64,000 nt of DNA from the IMG/VR virus record IMGVR_UViG_3300017991_000002, positions 124,001 through 188,000 of that record. One strand, given 5' to 3'. Positions 1,135 through 63,653 of the stretch are shown here, piece by piece. The stretch's first letter is position 1; each line of letters begins with the position of its first letter. A program made the translations under genes and the position numbers. The notes under the pieces were generated by a model. It was not told the origin of the DNA. It worked only from the letters and a program-made list of their open reading frames with translations, and ran no database searches.

Positions 1135-1422
1135 ATGACCCAACCTATGTGGATAAAGGAAGCTGCTGCCTTAGCTATCAGCAGAGTACGATTTGAAGGG
1201 GCATACTTTAATGAAGGAACTGAAGAGGTGAGAAGAATTACAAAAGGCTTTGTCGAATCTTGGATTGTTCCTATTTTGAGGTCGATAAGAGATAGAGATA
1301 GTGAGACGGCCAGGTGTTATTTAGAGGGGGAGGAGAAGTACATCAATCATGGTATGGAAGACGGGAAGAATCAAAAGTCGTATTATGAAAGTCCCCGTAT
1401 TATATCATCCACCCCTTTGTAG
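1135..1422 (+). CDS. Hypothetical protein
   Basis: 95-aa ORF with GAGG SD, followed by a terminator. Confidence 0.65.
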   Translation: MTQPMWIKEAAALAISRVRFEGAYFNEGTEEVRRITKGFVESWIVPILRSIRDRDSETARCYLEGEEKYINHGMEDGKNQKSYYESPRIISSTPL

Positions 1423-1437
1423 TATAACAAAAAACGG

Positions 1438-1491
1438 AGCCCTTGGAAGGCCAGTAGTTTCAACCCTATCCGCCTTCTGGGGGCTTTTTTT
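1438..1491 (+). terminator. Intrinsic terminator between convergent genes, possibly bidirectional
   Basis: 14-bp stem AGCCCTTGGAAGGC/GCCTTCTGGGGGCT (three G-U pairs), 20-nt loop, T7 tract; an A-run lies upstream. Confidence 0.75.
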
Positions 1492-2914
1492 ATGCCTTCT
1501 GGGTAAGCTTGGAGAATATCGGATACCAGTTATGCTGCTCAACAAGACCATACTTGAGGTGCCATAGCATACACTGAACGTTTCTCAGGTTTATGTATCC
1601 CTTCATCTTCGTCCAACGACTTGGAATAACCAGGGTTGGCAAACACCTGAACAGGATTCCTTGTCTGTCTTCAACCAACTGATGATGGAAGTGGCCCGTG
1701 TGCCATTCGTGAAACTGAGTTTGGGCCCAAGCCTCCTTCATTTCGTTTGTCATGAGGCTATACAGGCGTTCCTTCTTTTCCTGGTCCCCGTGGCAGAAAC
1801 CGATGAGATTATTACCAAAATGATAATACTTCCTCATCATGGGTCTGTTTTCCACGGTAACATTATCATCGCTTCTGTACCAACAATGAAGCGCATCCCC
1901 GAGGTGGAACATTCTGTCCGGTGCGTGGTTGTCGAGAACTACAATGACCTTTACGGGGCCCAATTGACGGCACATGTCTATTATCTTAACCCACATCTCC
2001 CGACATTTTCGAAAGATCTTTGGCTCTCTTCCTTCCTCGTCTTGCGGTGTACCCCTAGCCGTTGTTTTATCCTGTGTATTGACATTGAATAAATCGTTCC
2101 CTGTCGGCAGTATGATCTCGTGGAGATCAAGATGACTGATCCTGGCAAGCTGGTGTTCCACTGACTTAATAGCCAACTTCTCTGCTATTTTTATGTCATA
2201 GTTTTCGCCGGTCTCTTCCCACCAGGACAGAAGTCCATAATGAATATCGACGAGTGGAACCTCGTAGACATATTCGCCGTCATCTCCTAAGATAAGATTG
2301 AAGTCTTCATATACCTTTGGAGAGTGTTTCTGCATGTCATCAACTTGATCGCTGATTATCTTAGACAGCTTTACCTCTTCAACCTTATACCTGAACTTTG
2401 CTTTAATGTGGGTAACAACTTTGGTTATCAATTCAGGCTTTCTGACGCTAAACCCTGTCATCTTACCATCTTCCCAAGAGAGATCCTGATCGCGGTAGTT
2501 TGTGTATATCGTCTGACGGGATATTGTCTTGTCGACAAGTTCCCACTTATCCATATCTATCTTGTACTTCTCAACAAGCTCGTCTACACTATGGATTTCA
2601 GTTGATTCACTCTCAAGATGGATCTCCTTCTCTCCTTTCGTATTAATGGTTTCCCTGATCGTGGAGTCGTCCTTGTCTAGACATGTCTTTGGATCCTTTT
2701 TCATCTCTCTTCTGAGAGTACTTTGACCATTATCCAAGACAGGCTTAACGTATCGATAGAGAACCCCATGAATGGATCCTGGGGTACAGTTAATATTGAA
2801 CTCTTTGTTCAATTCCCTTGCTATAACCTTGGATTTTCTAATCCCCTTGGCATATAGCTCCCTGACCTTATCGACATATTCTGGATGCTCTTTCCAATAT
2901 GACGATGCCATCAA
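1490..2914 (-). CDS. Calcineurin-like metallophosphoesterase with N-terminal HTH-like domain
   Basis: Metal-ligand motifs DIHYG, GNDLFN, DNH, HGD and HTGHFHH in canonical order; helical N-terminus (VRELYAKG...VIARELN). Confidence 0.75.
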   Translation of the reverse strand: MMASSYWKEHPEYVDKVRELYAKGIRKSKVIARELNKEFNINCTPGSIHGVLYRYVKPVLDNGQSTLRREMKKDPKTCLDKDDSTIRETINTKGEKEIHLESESTEIHSVDELVEKYKIDMDKWELVDKTISRQTIYTNYRDQDLSWEDGKMTGFSVRKPELITKVVTHIKAKFRYKVEEVKLSKIISDQVDDMQKHSPKVYEDFNLILGDDGEYVYEVPLVDIHYGLLSWWEETGENYDIKIAEKLAIKSVEHQLARISHLDLHEIILPTGNDLFNVNTQDKTTARGTPQDEEGREPKIFRKCREMWVKIIDMCRQLGPVKVIVVLDNHAPDRMFHLGDALHCWYRSDDNVTVENRPMMRKYYHFGNNLIGFCHGDQEKKERLYSLMTNEMKEAWAQTQFHEWHTGHFHHQLVEDRQGILFRCLPTLVIPSRWTKMKGYINLRNVQCMLWHLKYGLVEQHNWYPIFSKLTQKA

Positions 2915-2930
2915 AACCTCCTTGATAGGG

Positions 2931-3164
2931 TTAATACAGGTCTACTTCATACTCATTAAGGATGGCAATAAACCAATCCCTGATCCTTCCTACCAACTCC
3001 TCAGGGGTCAGATTTATCATATCCTTGGGTAGACCATGCTTGTCCCAAGACTTAAGCTGGGACTCTGTAGCCTGTAAAGCAGAAAGATATGTTCCAGCAT
3101 TCATGGCTATTTTAAGCTCTTCAGCCTCTTCCGGTAAGTTAAACGTCACACTCCACTCTGGCAT
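2931..3164 (-). CDS. Hypothetical protein
   Basis: 77-aa ORF with AAGGAAGGAG SD and an upstream sigma70-type promoter. Confidence 0.7.
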   Translation of the reverse strand: MPEWSVTFNLPEEAEELKIAMNAGTYLSALQATESQLKSWDKHGLPKDMINLTPEELVGRIRDWFIAILNEYEVDLY

Positions 3165-3186
3165 TGGATTCTCCTTCCTTTATAGG

Positions 3187-3215
3187 AAGATAGCATATCC
3201 GATCGAATTTGTCAA
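3187..3215 (-). promoter_or_regulatory. Sigma70-type promoter, leftward
   Basis: TTGACA (3215-3210), 17-nt spacer, TATCTT (3192-3187); the SD and ATG of 2931..3164 follow. Confidence 0.7.
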
Positions 3216-3222
3216 ATATTTG

Positions 3223-3251
3223 TTGACAAAATCATCCATTGGTTCTATATT
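3223..3251 (+). promoter_or_regulatory. Sigma70-type promoter, rightward
   Basis: TTGACA (3223-3228), 17-nt spacer, TATATT (3246-3251). Confidence 0.75.
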
Positions 3252-3428
3252 TTTAGTATGGAAGAGAGACACGAGGTTATACCGGAGGTGAAAACACCAA
3301 TAATAGAAGGCGAAATTTTGGTATGTGTCAAAAACGCAAAATAATACGAAAAAATTTTTCTTTTTTCTGTTCAGAAACGTATAAGTATAGTAGAGACCTT
3401 TAACCTCAGTCCACGAAAGGAGACATCC

Positions 3429-3704
3429 ATGGACAAAAAAGATTTGATTGAGGGCATTGTTTTTGAAAACGAGAACGTGTCCAAAGCACAGGCTGGTCGT
3501 ATTGTGGATGCCATCACAGACATGATGGTAGAGGCTATTTCCGATGGAGAAGAGGTGAAGCTCGGAACATTCTGCAGGCTCTCTCCTTATATAAGGTCGG
3601 CCAGAACGGCAAGAAATCCACAGACCGGTGAAACTATCCAGTGCCCGGCAAAAAGATCCGTCAGGTTTAAGCCTTTGAAGCAATTGAAGGAAGCACTGGC
3701 ATAG
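3429..3704 (+). CDS. hup: HU/IHF-family histone-like DNA-binding protein
   Basis: 91 aa: MDKKDLI...SKAQAGRIVD...GEEVKLGTF...RSARTARNPQTGETIQCPAKRSVRFKP..LKEAL. AAAGGAG SD. Confidence 0.95.
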   Translation: MDKKDLIEGIVFENENVSKAQAGRIVDAITDMMVEAISDGEEVKLGTFCRLSPYIRSARTARNPQTGETIQCPAKRSVRFKPLKQLKEALA

Positions 3705-3707
3705 GAG

Positions 3708-3736
3708 AAGGGGCGGGAGACCGCCCCTTTATTTTT
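3708..3736 (+). terminator. Intrinsic terminator after HU
   Basis: AAGGGGCGG-GAGA-CCGCCCCTT followed by TATTTTT. Confidence 0.85.
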
Positions 3737-3762
3737 AATACCTTGACGTATTTGGAGGTCTC

Positions 3763-3999
3763 ATGGCAACCATTAAGTCAGAATACAGAAGAAAGACCAG
3801 TTCATTAAGAATATTGAGAGCCCTTAGAAGACAGGGGGCATCAAAGGTATCCCTCCTGAAAAACTATCTAAACATAGACTCATCACTGTCAAGGATACTT
3901 AAGACACTACTCAAGAGGGGCTATGTGGAGAAGGTTGAGCGAGGGGTATATCGAATCACAGAAGATGGAATAAAAAAGCTTGAAGAAGAAAACTTTTAG
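3763..3999 (+). CDS. Winged-helix DNA-binding protein
   Basis: 78 aa: SLSRILKTLLKRGYVEKVERGVYRITEDG is a wHTH recognition helix plus wing. GGAGG SD. Confidence 0.75.
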   Translation: MATIKSEYRRKTSSLRILRALRRQGASKVSLLKNYLNIDSSLSRILKTLLKRGYVEKVERGVYRITEDGIKKLEEENF

Positions 4000-4102
4000 G
4001 ACCCGGTATCTAGTCGTGGGAGAGTCCTATGTTGACACCAAAAACAAGAAAACTTTCATTATGCGATATCTGTTGTGGTAGCAGATTACCGGGTCCTTTT
4101 TT
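3999..4102 (+). ncRNA. Candidate structured RNA or attenuator
   Basis: 10-bp perfect inverted repeat GGACCCGGTA/TACCGGGTCC encloses two G-U-containing hairpins and an A-rich linker, then T6. Confidence 0.45.
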
Positions 4103-4116
4103 CCGAGGAGAGATAG

Positions 4117-4779
4117 GTGATGGATAAAAACGAACTCGCGGATAAACATGAGGAGGTCGATCAACTCCGGGCTTATAGGGTAGAAGAAGATTTACCTGTG
4201 GATGATTATAGAGTCCAGTTACGTGTAAAAAATAACTATTTCCTGACGGCCATGGATCGGGCTGGTATAGCATCGATTGCCGAGCTTTCCAGAATGACGG
4301 GAATTGATCAAGGCGCTATCGGAAAGTTTGTAAATCTCAAGATGTCGCCGTATAAGTCAAGAACGGGCGAGCTTCGTACAAATATCCGTAAACTATGCGA
4401 CGTAATGGGGGCCTCTGTTGAAGACCTGTTTCCTCCGCAGCACTTGTATTCTCCACTACCAAGAAACACGGCGACTATGACCTTGCCTCTGCACAGTATT
4501 AAGAGTCTTATCCACTACAGTGACCAAGAGGTCCTACAGTTGATCAGTCGTAAAGAGGAGATAGATGCCGTACGGCAGGCCTTACAGACGGAGATAGACC
4601 CTCGTCAGGCGACGGTGGTCATGATGTATCACGGAATAGGGGAGTATGAAGGTAGGAATTATACCTATGACCAAATCGCACAACATCTTAATATCTCAGG
4701 AAGCCGTGTCGGGCAGATACTGGACAAAGCATACCGTAAACTTAGACAGTGCCCACTGTTCACAGAATACAGGAGATAA
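4117..4779 (+). CDS. XRE-type HTH plus sigma-70 region 4 domain protein
   Basis: N-terminal SIAELSRMTGIDQGAIGKFVNL; C-terminal DPRQATVVMMYHGI...TYDQIAQHLNISGSRVGQILDKAYRKLR. Confidence 0.8.
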   Translation: MMDKNELADKHEEVDQLRAYRVEEDLPVDDYRVQLRVKNNYFLTAMDRAGIASIAELSRMTGIDQGAIGKFVNLKMSPYKSRTGELRTNIRKLCDVMGASVEDLFPPQHLYSPLPRNTATMTLPLHSIKSLIHYSDQEVLQLISRKEEIDAVRQALQTEIDPRQATVVMMYHGIGEYEGRNYTYDQIAQHLNISGSRVGQILDKAYRKLRQCPLFTEYRR

Positions 4780-4837
4780 CGATATTCCGGACTATGCACG
4801 GAACGACATCAAACATTTATCGAGAAGGAGGTTTAAC

Positions 4838-5116
4838 GTGTTCTTGAAAATAAGCAATAGACTAATCAATACCGAGGGTATATCGGATATATATTTGGAA
4901 GTAGCCCCGGGTATAATGGAGATGATACTGATCGAAGGGGGCAGAATTATGCTCATCAGTAATGATGTTGATAAGGATTCCCTAAAGCTTGATGACTATG
5001 ACGGGGAGGTTTTGTTCCTCAGTCCCGGGGAGTATGAGGGAGTCTCCAACCATTTTAACAGCATAGCTTTGAACCTCTCACCGCACAAGGATGAGGACAA
5101 AAAGGATGGCGAGTAG
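4838..5116 (+). CDS. Hypothetical protein (start revised to GTG 4838)
   Basis: AAGGAGG SD upstream of GTG TTC TTG AAA, in frame with track ORF 4646..5116. Confidence 0.65.
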   Translation: MFLKISNRLINTEGISDIYLEVAPGIMEMILIEGGRIMLISNDVDKDSLKLDDYDGEVLFLSPGEYEGVSNHFNSIALNLSPHKDEDKKDGE

Positions 5117-5372
5117 ACGAGAAACTCGTATAACTGGTGATCAGGATGTTGTAGTCGTCTTTAACTGTAAAGACTTTTTCATTAATGACAAATGCATAGA
5201 AGATATAATCCTGGATACTATCAGGAAAAGATTAAAGACGATAGACCTAGAGAGCAATCGTGCCGTGTCCAGTAAACTGATTACATCCATTATCGAGAGC
5301 TTGGAGACCGATTCTGGGAAAAATAAGTCTACAATAAGAAGATTACGTGTAAAGGGAAAATCATGCTCGTAA
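5091..5372 (+). CDS. Hypothetical protein
   Basis: 93-aa ORF coupled to its neighbours; start uncertain. Confidence 0.6.
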   Translation: MRTKRMASRRETRITGDQDVVVVFNCKDFFINDKCIEDIILDTIRKRLKTIDLESNRAVSSKLITSIIESLETDSGKNKSTIRRLRVKGKSCS

Positions 5373-5767
5373 AGAAGATAGAGGTACCTATCTATAAACA
5401 CTTTTTGGTCTTTATAACCGACTGTGACTATTCAGGCTTGAGGACTTACCTGTCTGAGGAATATGAGATCGATTGGCTGCCTGAAAATGGAAGCTGTGGG
5501 CGCTCGTTCAAATTAGAGGCCACAACAGGGGCAATGATGTACTTTATTTGGATGAGAAAGTATGATAACCTTGTAGAGGATCATGTCACATTGTCCCATG
5601 AAATATCACATCATGTTTTCTGGATGTTCAACGATCTTGGAATGACCAGAACCAAAGATTCCGATGAAGCCTATGCCTACTATGATGGGTGGGTTACAGA
5701 GGAGATACTAAAAGCCCTGAATGAGTATAGGTTAAATAAAGGATCCGGGGAAGAGGGGAAAGAATGA
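5363..5767 (+). CDS. HExxH-motif protein (possible zinc metallopeptidase fold)
   Basis: TLSHEISHHVF followed by SDEAYAYY. Confidence 0.55.
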   Translation: MLVKKIEVPIYKHFLVFITDCDYSGLRTYLSEEYEIDWLPENGSCGRSFKLEATTGAMMYFIWMRKYDNLVEDHVTLSHEISHHVFWMFNDLGMTRTKDSDEAYAYYDGWVTEEILKALNEYRLNKGSGEEGKE

Positions 5768-6394: not shown

Positions 6395-6433
6395 GGTAGC
6401 GGCCGTAAGCCTCCTGCTGCCGCTACCTTTTTT
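6395..6433 (+). terminator. Intrinsic terminator with 15-nt loop
   Basis: GGTAGCGGC/GCCGCTACC 9-bp stem followed by T6. Confidence 0.8.
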
Positions 6434-38807: not shown

Positions 38808-39359
38808 TTACAGGCCACCTGTTCCGCCGGCTCCGCCTTTCCACTCAACATGCTCATAACGCAAAGTCACTTCGATCTTCACGATATCGTTGGCAGTATA
38901 GTCAAGGGTTCCGAAGTTAACAGCAGTTGGCCACACTCCTGCTAAAAACCAATGACCGGCTTCGTCTCCCCCATCGTGTCCGACAGAGTACGCAATAACA
39001 TCGGCCGTGGCTTTATAGTCAGACTGTCTTCCAATCGTTCCACCGGAAGCTCCACCAAACGACCCGGCATCATATACTTTCTGATACCAATTCCAGATTG
39101 TTGCAGCAGTTCCAGCATCCACAAAATCACGTAGTGTTAATGTTCCAGTTTCATAGGAAGCCTTACCGGCGACCCAAATCCTTGAATTCCAATATGGAAG
39201 TTCTATCTCTTCATTGGTAACATTCGGCAAGAAAGCAGACTCCACAGAGATCTTAATACTTTCACCGCCTGGAGATCCTCCGGGCAGCGCTATATCGATC
39301 TCAAAGTCAAACTGCCGAACCGGCTCATAACTCTGAAGTCTGGTTGCAAGTTCTACCAT
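38808..39359 (-). CDS. Tail tube protein (gp19-like)
   Basis: LPNVTNEEIELPYWN...AGKASYETGTLTLRD...W...VY...GVWPTAV..G.LDY. Confidence 0.92.
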   Translation of the reverse strand: MVELATRLQSYEPVRQFDFEIDIALPGGSPGGESIKISVESAFLPNVTNEEIELPYWNSRIWVAGKASYETGTLTLRDFVDAGTAATIWNWYQKVYDAGSFGGASGGTIGRQSDYKATADVIAYSVGHDGGDEAGHWFLAGVWPTAVNFGTLDYTANDIVKIEVTLRYEHVEWKGGAGGTGGL

Positions 39360-39382
39360 TAGCCCTCTCCTGTTTTAAAGAG

Positions 39383-39404
39383 GGCGGGGACGTGAATCCC
39401 CGCC
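39383..39404 (-). other. GC-rich hairpin between the sheath and tube genes
   Basis: GGCGGGGA-TTCACG-TCCCCGCC with no strong U-tract. Confidence 0.5.
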
Positions 39405-39410
39405 GCTTCA

Positions 39411-42400
39411 TTAATATTCTAATTCCTCAAACGAGGCACCGGTTGACAGGATGACAAAATCAACGGTAATAATTTCCGCAGCCTTCGTGGGCTTCAGATA
39501 AATACGACCATTCATCTCATTTCTGTCAATCTGGTCCGGAGGATTGGTTGATTCATCACAAATAACTCGAAACTCGTAAACACCCCGACGGTTCTGGATA
39601 TTGGTAAAGATCGGGGTAACGAGATTCACAAACCGTCTCCACGTAACCGGATCATTCGGTTCAAACACCAAGTATTTCACCACAGTAGCAACGATTTTCC
39701 GTGCATACAGCAGTAAACGTCTGACGTTCACTCGATCCAGTGCAGTAGGTGCCCGCTGTGCAGTTCTCTGGCCCCAAATCGTAATACCGTCCGGATAGAA
39801 GTTGACAATCGGGTTCACAACATTTGGATAGCCATACATTAAATCCCGATCGCCTTGGTTTGGAGACATCTCGAGATCTATAGCAGCAATGATGTGTGCT
39901 CTATTGTATCCAGCGGGTGCATACCATGGTTCAGACACATAGTCAGTATATGCATACACTGCAGCTACATGCCCGCTCGGGGGCGTCCACACTTCAACCG
40001 CATTGTACGAATCATATACCTTGACCCACGGCCAATAGATGGCTGCATAGGACGAGTTGATTGCCTGCCCGGGTGAATAAGATCCTTGACGATTGGACCA
40101 ATCAACCACCGACTGAGGACCCGTAAGACCGAACGGGGGATCCAGAATGCACATACAATCAGCCCTGTTCTCACACATCGAAATCATATACGTATGAACT
40201 GCCGTTGCCGAAACTCCAGGAACGATAACAAGGTTCACATCCAAGGTTTCAGCATTAGCATAGATATGGAGACCCGTAGGATCACCGGAAGGATCAGCTG
40301 CGACACCGATGTAATCGGCCTCAGAAAGAGCTCCAGTTCCATTTGACCCCTGCAGGGCAACCGTAGCACCGAATGCATAGGTTCCATAGGCCGGAGGCAA
40401 CCCAATGCCACCATCCTCAGCAACCATATATTTCGATGGATTATAATCTGACGCTTCTGTCCCAAGCTGTGTTTCGATGAAACTATCAGCATCAGTATCG
40501 TTGACAGTCAAGTTGTCAAAAGACGCAACTCGTGTCCCGCTGTAATACAGATCGATCTTGAAAGCATCACGAAACTCGTAGTAGGGAGAATCCTCCACTG
40601 GTTCAGCTGGGTTGTCAGTCACCCATTGATCATGCTGTGTCTTCTGGTAACCCTCATCGACAATAGCGGACAAGTTATTACCGTCCGTTCCGGGGGTCTG
40701 GGCGATCAACGTAAACGTCGCCTGCTCAGTTCCCGTTCCCCAGTGAACTGAATTATCAAGCCCGAGAGGGGTGTCTGCAGTACTTGCTGCATCCACAAGC
40801 AGAGAAGCCGCCGGGCCTTCAAGAGTCGTTGTGATCCTAACATAATTCTTGTAATTCGAAGCTGTTGCTCCAGTCAGCCCGCTAAGATCGGCAATGACTG
40901 CATCAGTCGTAACCGTTCCGGACGTCAGAGTAAACGATTGAGAGGCAGACCCGGCTACAGCACCTGGCCCCGCTTCAACGTAACCGGCCTGGAAGACATT
41001 CGTCCCAACCGTTCCTGCAGCAACTGCAATCGTCGAAGAGGTTCCTAACGTCGGTGTCGTTTCATCATTACTGATGAAATAAAAATAACCGTTGCTCCAC
41101 TCAACTTTGATGTTCTGGTTTCCGGGCCATGCGAGTCCATTAATTGCGGACTCCATTACTTGTGCCACGTCAGACATATCAGCAGCAGACGTAAAGTCCA
41201 TACTGGAAGCTTCCAGGGCCCCAGCACCATCCAAATTGACCTGAATCGAACCATTCGAGATTGCTTGAAAGTTCGAAAGGTTGGCAGTGCTGTCACCAGA
41301 TCTATAGTAACCAAAAGGGTTAACCCATACGGTTAATGCAACATCCCCATCAGTGCCTACCTCAGATGCAGGTATTGATATACCAGAACCAAAGACATCC
41401 GTATATCCTTCAATCGTAGAGGGGACCGTCTTGAACTCTATCTCCCCCGAAGACCCGATCGTATTGGTTCTGACGTAGACATAGGTATTAGCGCCGATCG
41501 TTTCCGGCCAAGCGGTAATACCAGTCGTCCCCGCATTTATATCATCACACATGTGCTGGGCAGTAGTATTGGTATCCCTGAACCTGACTTCTTGGTCGGC
41601 TCCTCCATCGACAGCGAGGATGATAACATCATTTCCATCCGAACCTGCTGTAGGAGTTACCGTAGCCATTACCATATAGCTGGCACCATGAACGTCCGTC
41701 CCCGTCCCACCCGGAACAGAGGTGAATGTGGCATTGACATTACTTCCAGTCTCATTGACGTCTGACTCGAAGGAGAAATGATTTCCTCCGACATAGGTGA
41801 AATTCTCATTCCTGCTCGTAGCCGCCCGAATACCAGCCTGGATTGTGGCAGCAACATCATTCAGATCAAGATCGGATGTAAAATCAAGACCGGTTATATC
41901 GATGTTCGATGAAGATCCAGCCCTGTCAGTGTAAACCATCCTGAACTCACCGTCAGAAACCAACTGGAAAGCAGCCAGGTTTCCGGAAGAAGTTCCACCA
42001 ATACACTTGAACGTCGTTGATTCAGTAATGGAATACGTTTGGGCCTCTTCACCTTCAATTGTTCCATAGGTTGCGGCGCTTAAGGTAAAGGAACCTTCAT
42101 TAGCGCCGGTAATAAGTGCCGGTCCTTCCTCGGCCGGAATTTCGGCCTTTGCCTTCGTTTCTGATCCATCAGTAATTCTAACAAAGTAACTCTGGTTACC
42201 TTTGGACATAAACTGAAGGTGGGCCAACGTAGCAAGGTGATCACTGCTCGGGTTACCAAACTCACGGATGAATTGGGTATGACTCGAGATATAAATCGCC
42301 TCGTTGACCGGTCCCTTTGTTGCAGTCCCCAAATTACCAAGAATACTGGTCGATATCTGGGGAGCATACAACGAAAGGTCTATTTCTCTTATGTATACTC

Positions 42401-52969: not shown

Positions 52970-53334
52970 GGCTCACCGCTTGGTAACGGCTCCCCTCCGA
53001 TAAAAATAGTTACTGTCGCCTGGTTTCCACTACTATTAGAAAGCAATAGCTGATCAATGTCCGTACCCATCACTATAAAACAAACAGAGAAGGCAATACT
53101 CGATCCCGCAAGTGATGTCTTTAGGCTGATATCCTGATCAGTAAAGATAGCAACGAACTGGGCATCATCAAACGGAATACCTACATCAAAATCTGTCGTC
53201 CCCGTGTCTATGGGAAATATGTAGGTAGCTTCCTCCGGAGTACCGATGGCGCGGGTAAAGTCATACAGCGATCGCTTTCGTTCTGTGTCTGTGGTTTTCC
53301 ACAAAGTTCCTTCTAATGTCCACGTAATTGACAT
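52960..53334 (-). CDS. Hypothetical beta-rich protein
   Basis: 124-aa ORF with GAGGA SD. Confidence 0.65.
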   Translation of the reverse strand: MSITWTLEGTLWKTTDTERKRSLYDFTRAIGTPEEATYIFPIDTGTTDFDVGIPFDDAQFVAIFTDQDISLKTSLAGSSIAFSVCFIVMGTDIDQLLLSNSSGNQATVTIFIGGEPLPSGEPCP

Positions 53335-63019: not shown

Positions 63020-63120
63020 GCAGTCCCTAGGAGACTGCTTGTTGCCTCAGGGAATGCGCGCACCCTTTGGCAATCCGGCTAACCCCAGGTAGCCTGCCCA
63101 TACGGATAAGTCCGTATGGG
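63020..63120 (-). ncRNA. Candidate structured intergenic RNA (four consecutive hairpins)
   Basis: CCCAUACGGA/UCCGUAUGGG; GGCUA/UAGCC; UUGCC..AGGG..UGC/GCA..CCCU..GGCAA; GCAGUCUC/GGGACUGC. Confidence 0.5.
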
Positions 63121-63128
63121 GAGTCTTG

Positions 63129-63653
63129 TTAATCTGACAATACGTATTCAACAAAAAGATTGAACTTACCGGCAGTAAGATCCTGAACAGCGATCGTAGC
63201 GGTCAGTTCACGAGCCGCAGTTGTTTTCACCGCATTGGCAACGGTCCCGTCCTCAATACCCTCATGAAGACCGGCATCCCAAGGATTGGTTCCATCGTTA
63301 ATTGCGATCGCAGCAACGATATCATCAGCACCTTCGGCATGAAGGGCAATGGTTGCTGTATCAGCGGCAGATTCACATGTGGTAAGCACATCGACATACG
63401 CCCGCATGATGATAGCATTGTCGGGAATTGTAACTCCCAATCCAATCGCCCCGATAGTACCACCAAGCTCAGCGAAGTCATACTGCGCTTTGACCGTAAA
63501 TGGCATTTTGGTGTACAGGAACTGAGTTTTGTCCAGCAGCTCCTGAGCAATAATATCTACCTTATCCAAGGTAAGATCAGACCCATCATCCTGAGCCAGC
63601 TCACGGAGGGTCTCATCCCATTCATAGGCAGTATTTGCAGTTAATTCAGACAT
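63129..63653 (-). CDS. Putative virion decoration protein (beta-sandwich)
   Basis: IPDNAIIMRAYVDVLTT...AAR.LTATIAVQDLTAGKFNLFVEY; GGAGG SD. Confidence 0.55.
   Translation of the reverse strand: MSELTANTAYEWDETLRELAQDDGSDLTLDKVDIIAQELLDKTQFLYTKMPFTVKAQYDFAELGGTIGAIGLGVTIPDNAIIMRAYVDVLTTCESAADTATIALHAEGADDIVAAIAINDGTNPWDAGLHEGIEDGTVANAVKTTAARELTATIAVQDLTAGKFNLFVEYVLSD

What the first reader, a model, noticed from the sequence alone, without database searches (positions are those of the whole stretch)
3999..4102. Candidate ~100-nt structured RNA gating the XRE/sigma-4 regulator
Seen: closing stem GGACCCGGUA (3999-4008)/UACCGGGUCC (4087-4096) followed by U6. Inside are hairpin CGUGGGA-GAG-UCCUAUG, an A-rich strand ACACCAAAAACAAGAAAAC and hairpin AUCUGUUG-UGG-UAGCAGAU. 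The G-U pairs favour the plus strand. It fills the gap between the wHTH stop and the SD of 4117..4779. A 78-nt loop is far too large for an ordinary terminator. Inference: a small RNA or a protein/ligand-controlled attenuator.
Basis: partly seen in the sequence, partly recalled or inferred. Interest (0 to 1): 0.6.

Follow-up and report, generated by a model that had tools for sequence, protein, structure and literature searches.

The report
Branched terminator before phage regulator gene
Between two small regulator genes of an uncultured 205-kb phage lies a strong RNA helix followed by a run of U, most likely a leaky transcription stop signal with an unusually large 78-base insert in its loop. 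Nothing shows it to be a new regulatory RNA.

Summary
GGACCCGGTA (3999-4008) pairs perfectly with TACCGGGTCC (4087-4096); A3998:T4097 makes it 11 bp. T6 follows directly, on the coding strand only. The region lies in the 117-nt gap between a 78-aa winged-helix gene and an XRE/sigma-70-region-4 gene.

A helix of this kind next to a T-run is rare: about 0.13 are expected per simulated genome. Its strength (about -19 to -21 kcal/mol) matches the two canonical terminators of the same early operon.

The signal comes from the closing helix and one hairpin (4068-4086). The other 59 nt fold no better than shuffles (z -0.5).

There is no Rfam match, no tRNA and no second copy in the genome. The phage has no relatives close enough to align, so covariation could not be tested.

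Best reading: a non-canonical, probably leaky and translation-sensitive intrinsic terminator or attenuator that limits read-through into the sigma-like regulator gene. A ligand- or protein-controlled RNA, an embedded promoter and a 32-codon upstream ORF are not excluded, but none has positive support. Interest is modest.

The parts
3350..3395 (+). Conserved phage promoter-like motif (T-rich block, then ...AAACGTATAAGTATAGTAGAG) that heads the operon
   Evidence: One of 9 near-identical copies in the 205-kb genome, each shortly upstream of an SD and start codon.
3429..3704 (+). HU-like DNA-binding protein gene (91 aa), first gene of the operon
   Evidence: Pfam Bac_DNA_binding, E 1.1e-27. Called as a gene in the metagenome record.
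3707..3735 (+). T1, a canonical terminator: 10-bp stem, 4-nt loop, T-rich tail, 2 nt after the HU stop codon
   Evidence: Terminator scan. Hairpin energy -19.7 kcal/mol.
3763..3999 (+). Winged-helix (MarR/HTH_27-like) gene, 78 aa; stop TAG at 3997-3999
   Evidence: Pfam and PHROG transcriptional regulator hits. No relatives other than itself.
3998..4008 (+). 5' arm of the closing helix (A + GGACCCGGTA); overlaps the wHTH stop codon
   Evidence: Pair probabilities 0.83-1.0. In the nascent RNA, 4005-4007 are transiently paired to 4037-4039, P about 0.95.
4015..4031 (+). Hairpin 1 (7 bp, loop GAG). It contains the SD-like GGGAGAG (4018-4024) and ATG 4029.
   Evidence: Minimum-energy fold of the nascent transcript, but only about 0.1 probability in the full-length ensemble.
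4035..4053 (+). A-rich, predicted mostly single-stranded stretch
4032..4062 (+). Weak sigma-70-like promoter candidate inside the loop: TTGACA, 19-nt spacer, CATTAT
   Evidence: 10 of 12 matches with a non-optimal spacer. TTGACA is not enriched in non-coding DNA of this genome: 11 of 119 copies against about 10 expected.
4029..4127 (+). Candidate 32-codon upstream ORF. It runs through the 3' arm and U-tract and overlaps the start of the sigma-like gene.
   Evidence: Read from the sequence. Its codon-usage score of -0.03 is typical of non-coding frames. Only 3% of real in-frame windows score that low. Not called as a gene in the public record.
4068..4086 (+). Hairpin 2 (8 bp including 2 G-U, loop UGG), directly abutting the 3' arm
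   Evidence: Pair probabilities 0.59-0.90. ATCTG-N9-CAGAT occurs once in the window, with 0.08 expected.
4087..4097 (+). 3' arm of the closing helix (TACCGGGTCC + T)
4097..4102 (+). U6 tract directly after the helix
4105..4112 (+). Shine-Dalgarno sequence GAGGAGAG of the sigma-like gene
4117..4779 (+). XRE-HTH plus sigma-70 region 4 protein gene (start GTG 4117 or ATG 4120)
   Evidence: Pfam Sigma70_r4 2.5e-11 and HTH_26 1.6e-5. NCBIfam sigma70-ECF superfamily over residues 134-211 only. In-frame TAG at 4114-4116 bars any extension upstream.
6395..6433 (+). T3, the next terminator of the same gene array: 9-bp stem, 15-nt loop, T6, 12 nt before the next start
   Evidence: Hairpin energy -18.9 kcal/mol.

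Best explanation
The segment 3998-4102 is most likely the factor-independent termination signal at the 3' end of the wHTH gene. An 11-bp GC-rich RNA helix closes directly onto U6, on the coding strand. Instead of the usual 3-10-nt loop, the helix encloses 78 nt. These hold one stable hairpin (4068-4086) that abuts the 3' arm and so could stack on the helix. The remaining ~59 nt are weakly structured.

It would work as a leaky stop. Transcripts started at the conserved promoter motif (about 3350-3395) pass T1, then this element, and only the read-through fraction reaches the sigma-like regulator gene. That would delay or dose the regulator.

The 5' arm begins inside the wHTH stop codon. A ribosome finishing wHTH would therefore cover that arm, so termination should depend on how translation and transcription are coupled.

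Shown: the sequence features, thermodynamics, statistical rarity, strand specificity and operon context.
Inferred: that RNA polymerase actually stops at about 4102, that the stop is partial, and that ribosomes modulate it.
For: - The helix is perfect, has 7 G-C pairs, and ends exactly at T6.
- The helix contributes about -19.4 kcal/mol: -35.5 for the whole element against -16.1 for the interior. The arms alone on a tetraloop give -20.9, the same as T1 (-19.7) and T3 (-18.9) of this operon. This is near the -18.1 median reported for terminators.
- Such a stem next to a T-run is expected 0.13 times per genome.
- The U-tract exists only on the sense strand, and G-U pairs favour that strand.
- It sits at a co-directional gene junction, with the T-run ending 18 nt before the next ATG. 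This layout matches T3 (12 nt) and resembles T1 (28 nt).
- A second long hairpin with U5 occupies another co-directional junction of the same genome (genome 108489-108577, z -3.62).
- Two of the roughly 10 distant lineages of the sigma-like gene also have a hairpin plus T-run just before its SD: L002-L004 and L022.
- Terminators starting a few nt after a stop codon are repressed by the lead ribosome in E. coli, where efficiency fell from about 90% to under 10% (PMC4824070).
Against: - The 78-nt loop violates the loop criterion (3-10 nt) of every definition consulted, and the terminator scan does not call it.
- In the nascent RNA, part of the 5' arm (4005-4007) is already paired. The estimated refolding barrier is 7-13 kcal/mol, so closure within the pause at the U-tract is not assured.
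- There are no homologues, so there is no evidence of selection on the pairing.
Confidence: 0.55

Rival explanations
1. A regulated cis-acting RNA: a riboswitch-like or protein-binding leader whose closing helix is itself the terminator, or a stable 3'-UTR-derived small RNA released at the U-tract.
For: - The whole element is significantly stable, z -3.6.
- It has a three-way-junction shape with a long single-stranded A-rich strand and a U-tail.
- It gates a regulator gene.
- In the nascent RNA a small competitor helix (4005-4010 with 4034-4039, enclosing hairpin 1) holds part of the 5' arm. It could serve as a weak antiterminator if something stabilised it.
Against: - No Rfam family matches at E up to 10.
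- The interior folds no better than shuffles, and hairpin 1 is disfavoured at equilibrium.
- No plus-strand promoter-like site was found between 3346 and 4758, so none precedes the element.
- A covariance model of the element finds no other copy in the genome or in loci carrying the related gene.
- No homologues exist, so there is no covariation data.
Confidence: 0.12
2. A promoter embedded in a terminator, acting as an insulator. The arms stop transcripts from upstream. An internal host-type promoter (TTGACA 4032-4037, 19 nt, CATTAT 4057-4062) starts a new mRNA near 4069. This mRNA lacks the 5' arm and so is not terminated. The ATCTG-N9-CAGAT palindrome (4068-4086) would be an operator at +1.
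For: - There is a consensus -35 hexamer with a 4-of-6 -10, 55 nt upstream of the gene.
- The palindrome sits exactly at the predicted start site and is rare, with 0.08 expected per window.
- XRE-type regulators commonly autoregulate (general knowledge).
- The phage's own conserved promoter motif lacks a -35, so a separate host-type promoter for an early regulator would be logical.
Against: - The 19-nt spacer and weak -10 fall outside the scan's criteria.
- TTGACA is not enriched in non-coding DNA here.
- The palindrome and the arm sequences do not recur as operators elsewhere in the genome.
- There is no TSS data.
Confidence: 0.12
3. Leader-peptide coupling. A 32-codon upstream ORF (4029-4127, SD GGGAGAG 6 nt upstream) is translated through the 3' arm and U-tract. 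The ribosome then blocks the terminator helix, as in the E. coli pyrBI attenuator (compared from memory), and hands over to the overlapping start of the sigma-like gene.
For: - A canonical SD lies at the same spacing as the neighbouring genes.
- The frame is open to 5 nt past ATG 4120, an overlap typical of coupled phage genes.
- Hairpin 1 would mask this SD and ATG.
Against: - The codon-usage score is -0.03, typical of non-coding frames. Only 3% of real 32-codon windows score as low.
- An open frame of 32 codons is not rare at this base composition (own estimate, about 0.16 per frame).
- There is no run of regulatory codons.
- It is not called as a gene in the public record.
- It has no homologues.
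Confidence: 0.08
4. No RNA function. The inverted repeat arose by chance or acts on DNA, for example as two half-sites for a DNA-binding protein, a cruciform, or the ends of a tiny inserted or invertible segment.
For: - About 6 perfect 11-bp inverted repeats within 150 bp are expected in 205 kb, and about 10 are seen.
- The interior looks like random sequence in folding terms.
- Two DNA-binding protein genes flank it.
Against: - The coincidence of intergenic position, sense orientation, GC-rich arms and an abutting T6 is rare (0.13 per genome).
- The arms are unique in the genome, so it is not a repeated mobile element.
- All three independent assemblies carry the same orientation and identical sequence.
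- 78 bp is short for a recombinase-mediated inversion (general knowledge), and no integrase or recombinase family appeared among the 12 flanking ORFs scanned.
Confidence: 0.12

Closest known systems
Canonical (L-shaped) Rho-independent terminators
   Same: GC-rich perfect stem of 10-11 bp, energy about -20 kcal/mol, U6 directly 3' of the stem, sense strand, at the end of a gene.
   Different: The loop is 78 nt and branched, against 3-10 nt. The termination point lies about 103 nt after the stop codon, although the stem starts inside it. Standard predictors do not call it.
Hairpin-cluster and other non-canonical intrinsic terminators (WebGeSTer classes; Gupta and Pal 2021, PMC8355165)
   Same: Several hairpins within a short distance downstream of a stop codon would act as one termination unit.
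   Different: Here the hairpins are nested inside one long-range helix rather than placed side by side. That geometry is not among the L, I, U, V and X classes listed.
Serial terminators in phage early operons, read through by leakiness or antitermination (lambda tR1/tR2 before Q; general knowledge)
   Same: An early promoter, then small DNA-binding protein genes separated by terminators, then a downstream transcription regulator whose expression depends on read-through.
   Different: No antiterminator protein or nut/put-like RNA was identified. The promoter class and the host are unknown. This is an analogy of layout only.
Translation-sensitive terminators close to stop codons, and pyrBI-type attenuation (PMC4824070; pyrBI from general knowledge)
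   Same: [quoted passage not shown] A ribosome could block the helix.
   Different: The two arms are about 90 nt apart. The ribosome would therefore have to trail the polymerase by about 100 nt to cover the 5' arm, not a few nt. No evidence of translation of the upstream ORF.
Riboswitch expression platforms
   Same: A junction-type fold upstream of a gene whose closing helix ends in a U-tract.
   Different: No aptamer family match, no conserved core, no defined alternative fold, and the interior is not significantly structured.

Membership tests
Rho-independent (intrinsic) terminator | Stable GC-rich stem of about 4-17 bp | tested here: met
   11 perfect pairs, 7 G-C. The arms alone give -20.9 kcal/mol.
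Rho-independent (intrinsic) terminator | U-rich tract immediately 3' of the stem | tested here: met
   U6 at 4097-4102 with no gap.
Rho-independent (intrinsic) terminator | Short loop (3-10 nt) | tested here: not met
   The loop is 78 nt and branched. The criteria are quoted. The scan with loops of 3-8 nt does not report it.
Rho-independent (intrinsic) terminator | RNA 3' ends at the U-tract, in vivo or in vitro | not testable with these tools
Riboswitch or curated cis-regulatory RNA family | Match to a covariance model of a described family | tested here: not met
   No Rfam 15 match in 3999-4116 at E up to 10.
Riboswitch or curated cis-regulatory RNA family | Base pairs supported by covariation among homologues | not testable with these tools
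   - The only other copies are 100% identical.
- The flanking proteins have no relatives above 39% identity.
- Arm-pattern scans gave only chance matches.
- The covariance model found no other copy.
Riboswitch or curated cis-regulatory RNA family | Mutually exclusive terminator and antiterminator folds | tested here: inconclusive
   Only a weak 5-bp competitor helix (4005-4010 with 4034-4039) appears in the nascent RNA. The terminator fold is favoured by about 12 kcal/mol once the 3' arm exists.
Leader-peptide attenuator | Short translated ORF with an SD in the leader | tested here: inconclusive
   The ORF 4029-4127 has an SD-like GGGAGAG, but its codon usage is non-coding-like.
Leader-peptide attenuator | Run of regulatory codons or a stalling motif | tested here: not met
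   The predicted peptide has no tandem run of one amino acid apart from FF, which is encoded by the U-tract itself.
Independent small-RNA gene | Own promoter upstream of the structure | tested here: not met
   No plus-strand promoter-like site between 3346 and 4758, and no copy of the phage promoter motif there.
Invertible promoter switch (inverton) | Both orientations present in sequence data, and a recombinase nearby | tested here: not met
   Three assemblies all carry the same orientation. No integrase or recombinase family appeared among the 12 flanking ORFs scanned. Reads could not be examined.
MITE or other small mobile insertion | Several copies with terminal inverted repeats | tested here: not met
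   There is a single copy in the 205-kb genome.

The most novel reading that the evidence does not exclude
The element is a new kind of attenuator. A long-range terminator helix has its two arms about 90 nt apart. One arm lies under the ribosome that finishes the upstream gene, and the other inside a short upstream ORF. This would let the phage read the state of transcription-translation coupling, or a bound factor on the A-rich insert, to time expression of its sigma-like regulator.
Probability: 0.08. Interest if true: 0.6.

Novelty: new variant of a known kind. Interest (0 to 1): 0.27.

Why it matters
If the helix really terminates transcription, an intrinsic terminator can tolerate a 78-nt branched insert. 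That is a geometry which prediction programs exclude by design, so terminators of this kind would be missed in phage annotation.

It would also mark the sigma-like gene as a delayed, read-through-dependent regulator in an uncultured jumbo phage with no known relatives.

If it does not terminate, the finding is just an inverted repeat in an intergenic gap. Either way the present evidence does not point to a new RNA family.

Tried and rejected
- **Rfam 15** at E up to 10 on 3000-5500: nothing in the element. A weak Mu-gpT-DE hit at 3397-3431 is just the HU ribosome-binding region.
- **ARAGORN**: no tRNA or tmRNA in the window.
- **Close relatives**: none. The phage collection gave no match by DNA or protein. 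The viral-contig scan with the sigma-like protein gave nothing, as did the scan with the 473-aa exonuclease-like protein; the latter has only distant matches (at most 35% identity) in cultured phages. The word-index protein search found only self, one 39% hit and one 28% hit for the sigma-like protein, and only self for the wHTH protein.
- **Distant homologues** of the sigma-like gene (14 viral loci plus L002-L006): most abut the upstream gene, and no shared leader exists.
- **Arm pattern with a variable gap**: 10 viral and at least 120 metagenome matches. None has a following T-run or a similar interior, so they are chance matches.
- **Conserved promoter motif** used as a probe for related phages: 3 single, unrelated matches.
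- **Covariance model** of the element, searched against the whole genome and related loci: only itself.
- **Repeats among intergenic gaps**: this gap shares nothing with the others.
- **Mobile element, inverton, operator set**: rejected or unsupported.
- **Upstream ORF and a +1 extension of wHTH** at TTT-TAG: codon statistics are against the first and ambiguous for the second, and no upstream SD-like stimulator was seen.
- **Large exhaustive protein search**: not run. Relatives close enough to align an intergenic region would have been found by the word search.

Full report
**Context.** The window is bases 124001-188000 of a 205,367-bp virus record with direct terminal repeats, a jumbo phage from metagenomes. 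The finding lies in a run of small plus-strand genes:
- an HU-like gene (3429-3704);
- a 78-aa winged-helix gene (3763-3999);
- a 219/220-aa gene with an XRE-type HTH and sigma-70 region 4 (4117 or 4120 to 4779).

The public gene calls agree. A 45-nt motif repeated nine times in the genome, each copy just upstream of a gene start, sits at about 3350-3395. It is the likely promoter of this array. A canonical terminator, T1 (3707-3735), follows the HU gene. Another, T3 (6395-6433), follows seven genes later.

**The observation.** The two arms form 10 perfect Watson-Crick pairs, or 11 with A3998:U4097, and end directly at U6. In a 200-nt context the closing pairs have probability 0.83-1.0 and hairpin 2 (4068-4086) has 0.59-0.90. 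The plus strand folds better than the minus strand (-35.9 against -30.7 kcal/mol), and only the plus strand has the U-tract.

The whole element beats all 200 shuffles (z -3.6). Simulated genomes yield 0.13 perfect stems of at least 10 bp, with a loop of at least 20 nt, abutting a T5+ run. The real genome has this one plus an A/T low-complexity case. So the helix plus U-tract is unlikely to be accidental.

**What is not there.**
- The interior is not notably structured. 4009-4086 gives z -1.18, and the 59 nt before hairpin 2 give z -0.53.
- Rfam has no match, and there is no tRNA.
- There is no second copy in the genome by BLAST, by repeat analysis or by a covariance model.
- No plus-strand promoter-like site precedes the element within the wHTH gene.

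**Comparative evidence.** None could be obtained. Two other assemblies of the same phage are identical over the region. Neither flanking protein has a relative closer than 39% identity among 5.8 billion clustered proteins. No related phage turned up in the viral or cultured-phage collections. Pattern scans for the arms returned only chance matches.

Among distant homologues of the sigma-like gene (about 30% identity) most abut their upstream neighbour. Two lineages (L002-L004 and L022) have an ordinary hairpin plus T-run just before the SD. That gives mild support for the idea that this regulator is sometimes placed behind a terminator. It gives none for a conserved leader RNA.

**Mechanism.** The helix contributes about -19 to -21 kcal/mol, the same as T1 and T3 and near the published median for terminators. 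Its T-run ends 18 nt before the next ATG, similar to T3. A second long hairpin plus U5 occupies another co-directional junction of this genome.

I therefore read the element as the terminator of the wHTH gene. It would be a partial stop that limits read-through into the sigma-like regulator gene. It departs from the definition of an intrinsic terminator only in loop size. That departure matters kinetically. In the nascent RNA three bases of the 5' arm are paired elsewhere, and the estimated refolding barrier is 7-13 kcal/mol, so efficiency may be low.

The 5' arm starts inside the wHTH stop codon. T1 starts 2 nt after the HU stop. In E. coli such proximity lets the lead ribosome repress termination (PMC4824070). 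Translation-dependent read-through is thus a reasonable inference, but it is untested.

**Rivals.**
- An embedded promoter (TTGACA, 19 nt, CATTAT) with a palindrome at +1 would make the arms an insulator. The promoter match is weak, and TTGACA is not enriched in non-coding DNA.
- A 32-codon upstream ORF with a good SD crosses the 3' arm and overlaps the next start. Its codon usage looks non-coding.
- A ligand- or protein-controlled RNA is not excluded but has no positive evidence.
- A DNA-level or accidental repeat is made unlikely by the combined position, strand and T-run.

**Verdict.** The element is a real and statistically unusual helix plus U-tract. It is most likely a non-canonical, leaky terminator or attenuator in a phage early operon. 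The claim of a roughly 100-nt structured regulatory RNA is unsupported. The scores reflect a plausible variant of a known signal in an orphan genome.

Noticed in passing
window 3350-3395 (+); also genome 23854(-), 36056(-), 41711(-), 45222(-), 52447(-), 58347(+), 95712(+), 117835(+): A roughly 45-nt motif is highly conserved: a T-rich block, then ...AAACGTATAAGTATAGTAGAG. It occurs 9 times, each copy 15-45 nt upstream of an SD and start codon. It has a -10-like TATAAG but no -35. It is probably a phage-specific promoter class. No related phage shares it.
   Followed up: partly
genome 108489-108577 (L156:190-278), outside the window: An 84-nt rod-like hairpin (-41.9 kcal/mol, z -3.62) followed by U5 lies between two co-directional genes. 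Its 5' side overlaps the last codons of the upstream ORF.
   Followed up: partly
genome 68595-68765 (L157:96-266), outside the window: A 170-nt intergenic region has an extreme folding score (z -8.45). It holds long perfect hairpins and a canonical terminator, and has no Rfam match.
   Followed up: partly
window 3707-3735, 3998-4102, 6395-6433: All three terminator-like elements of the plus-strand early array begin 0-10 nt after a stop codon. All should therefore be sensitive to translation of the preceding gene.
   Followed up: partly
window 1439-1491: A 13-bp stem with a 20-nt loop has A- and T-runs on either side. It lies between convergent genes (1135-1422 plus strand, 1490-2914 minus strand) and is a likely bidirectional terminator.
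   Followed up: no
window 39355-39415 (-), 63060-63132 (-): Junction hairpins in the minus-strand (probably late) gene block are GC-rich and stable (z -3.2 and -2.2) but lack U-tracts, unlike those of the early block.
   Followed up: no
window 3187-3215 (-) and 3223-3251 (+): Back-to-back sigma-70-like promoters (TTGACA-17-TATCTT and TTGACA-17-TATATT) lie in the divergent region between the exonuclease-like gene block and the HU operon.
   Followed up: no
L002:983-1092, L003, L004: The closest relative of the sigma-like gene (39% identity) sits in a small integrase-bearing element next to an AAA_25 protein. It is preceded by a 111-nt gap ending in a 6-7-bp hairpin plus T5.
   Followed up: partly
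genome 11428-11706 and 52685-53261, outside the window: Two large intergenic regions share repeats of about 50 nt at 83-98% identity. The second also holds an A/T low-complexity palindrome at about 53021-53093.
   Followed up: no
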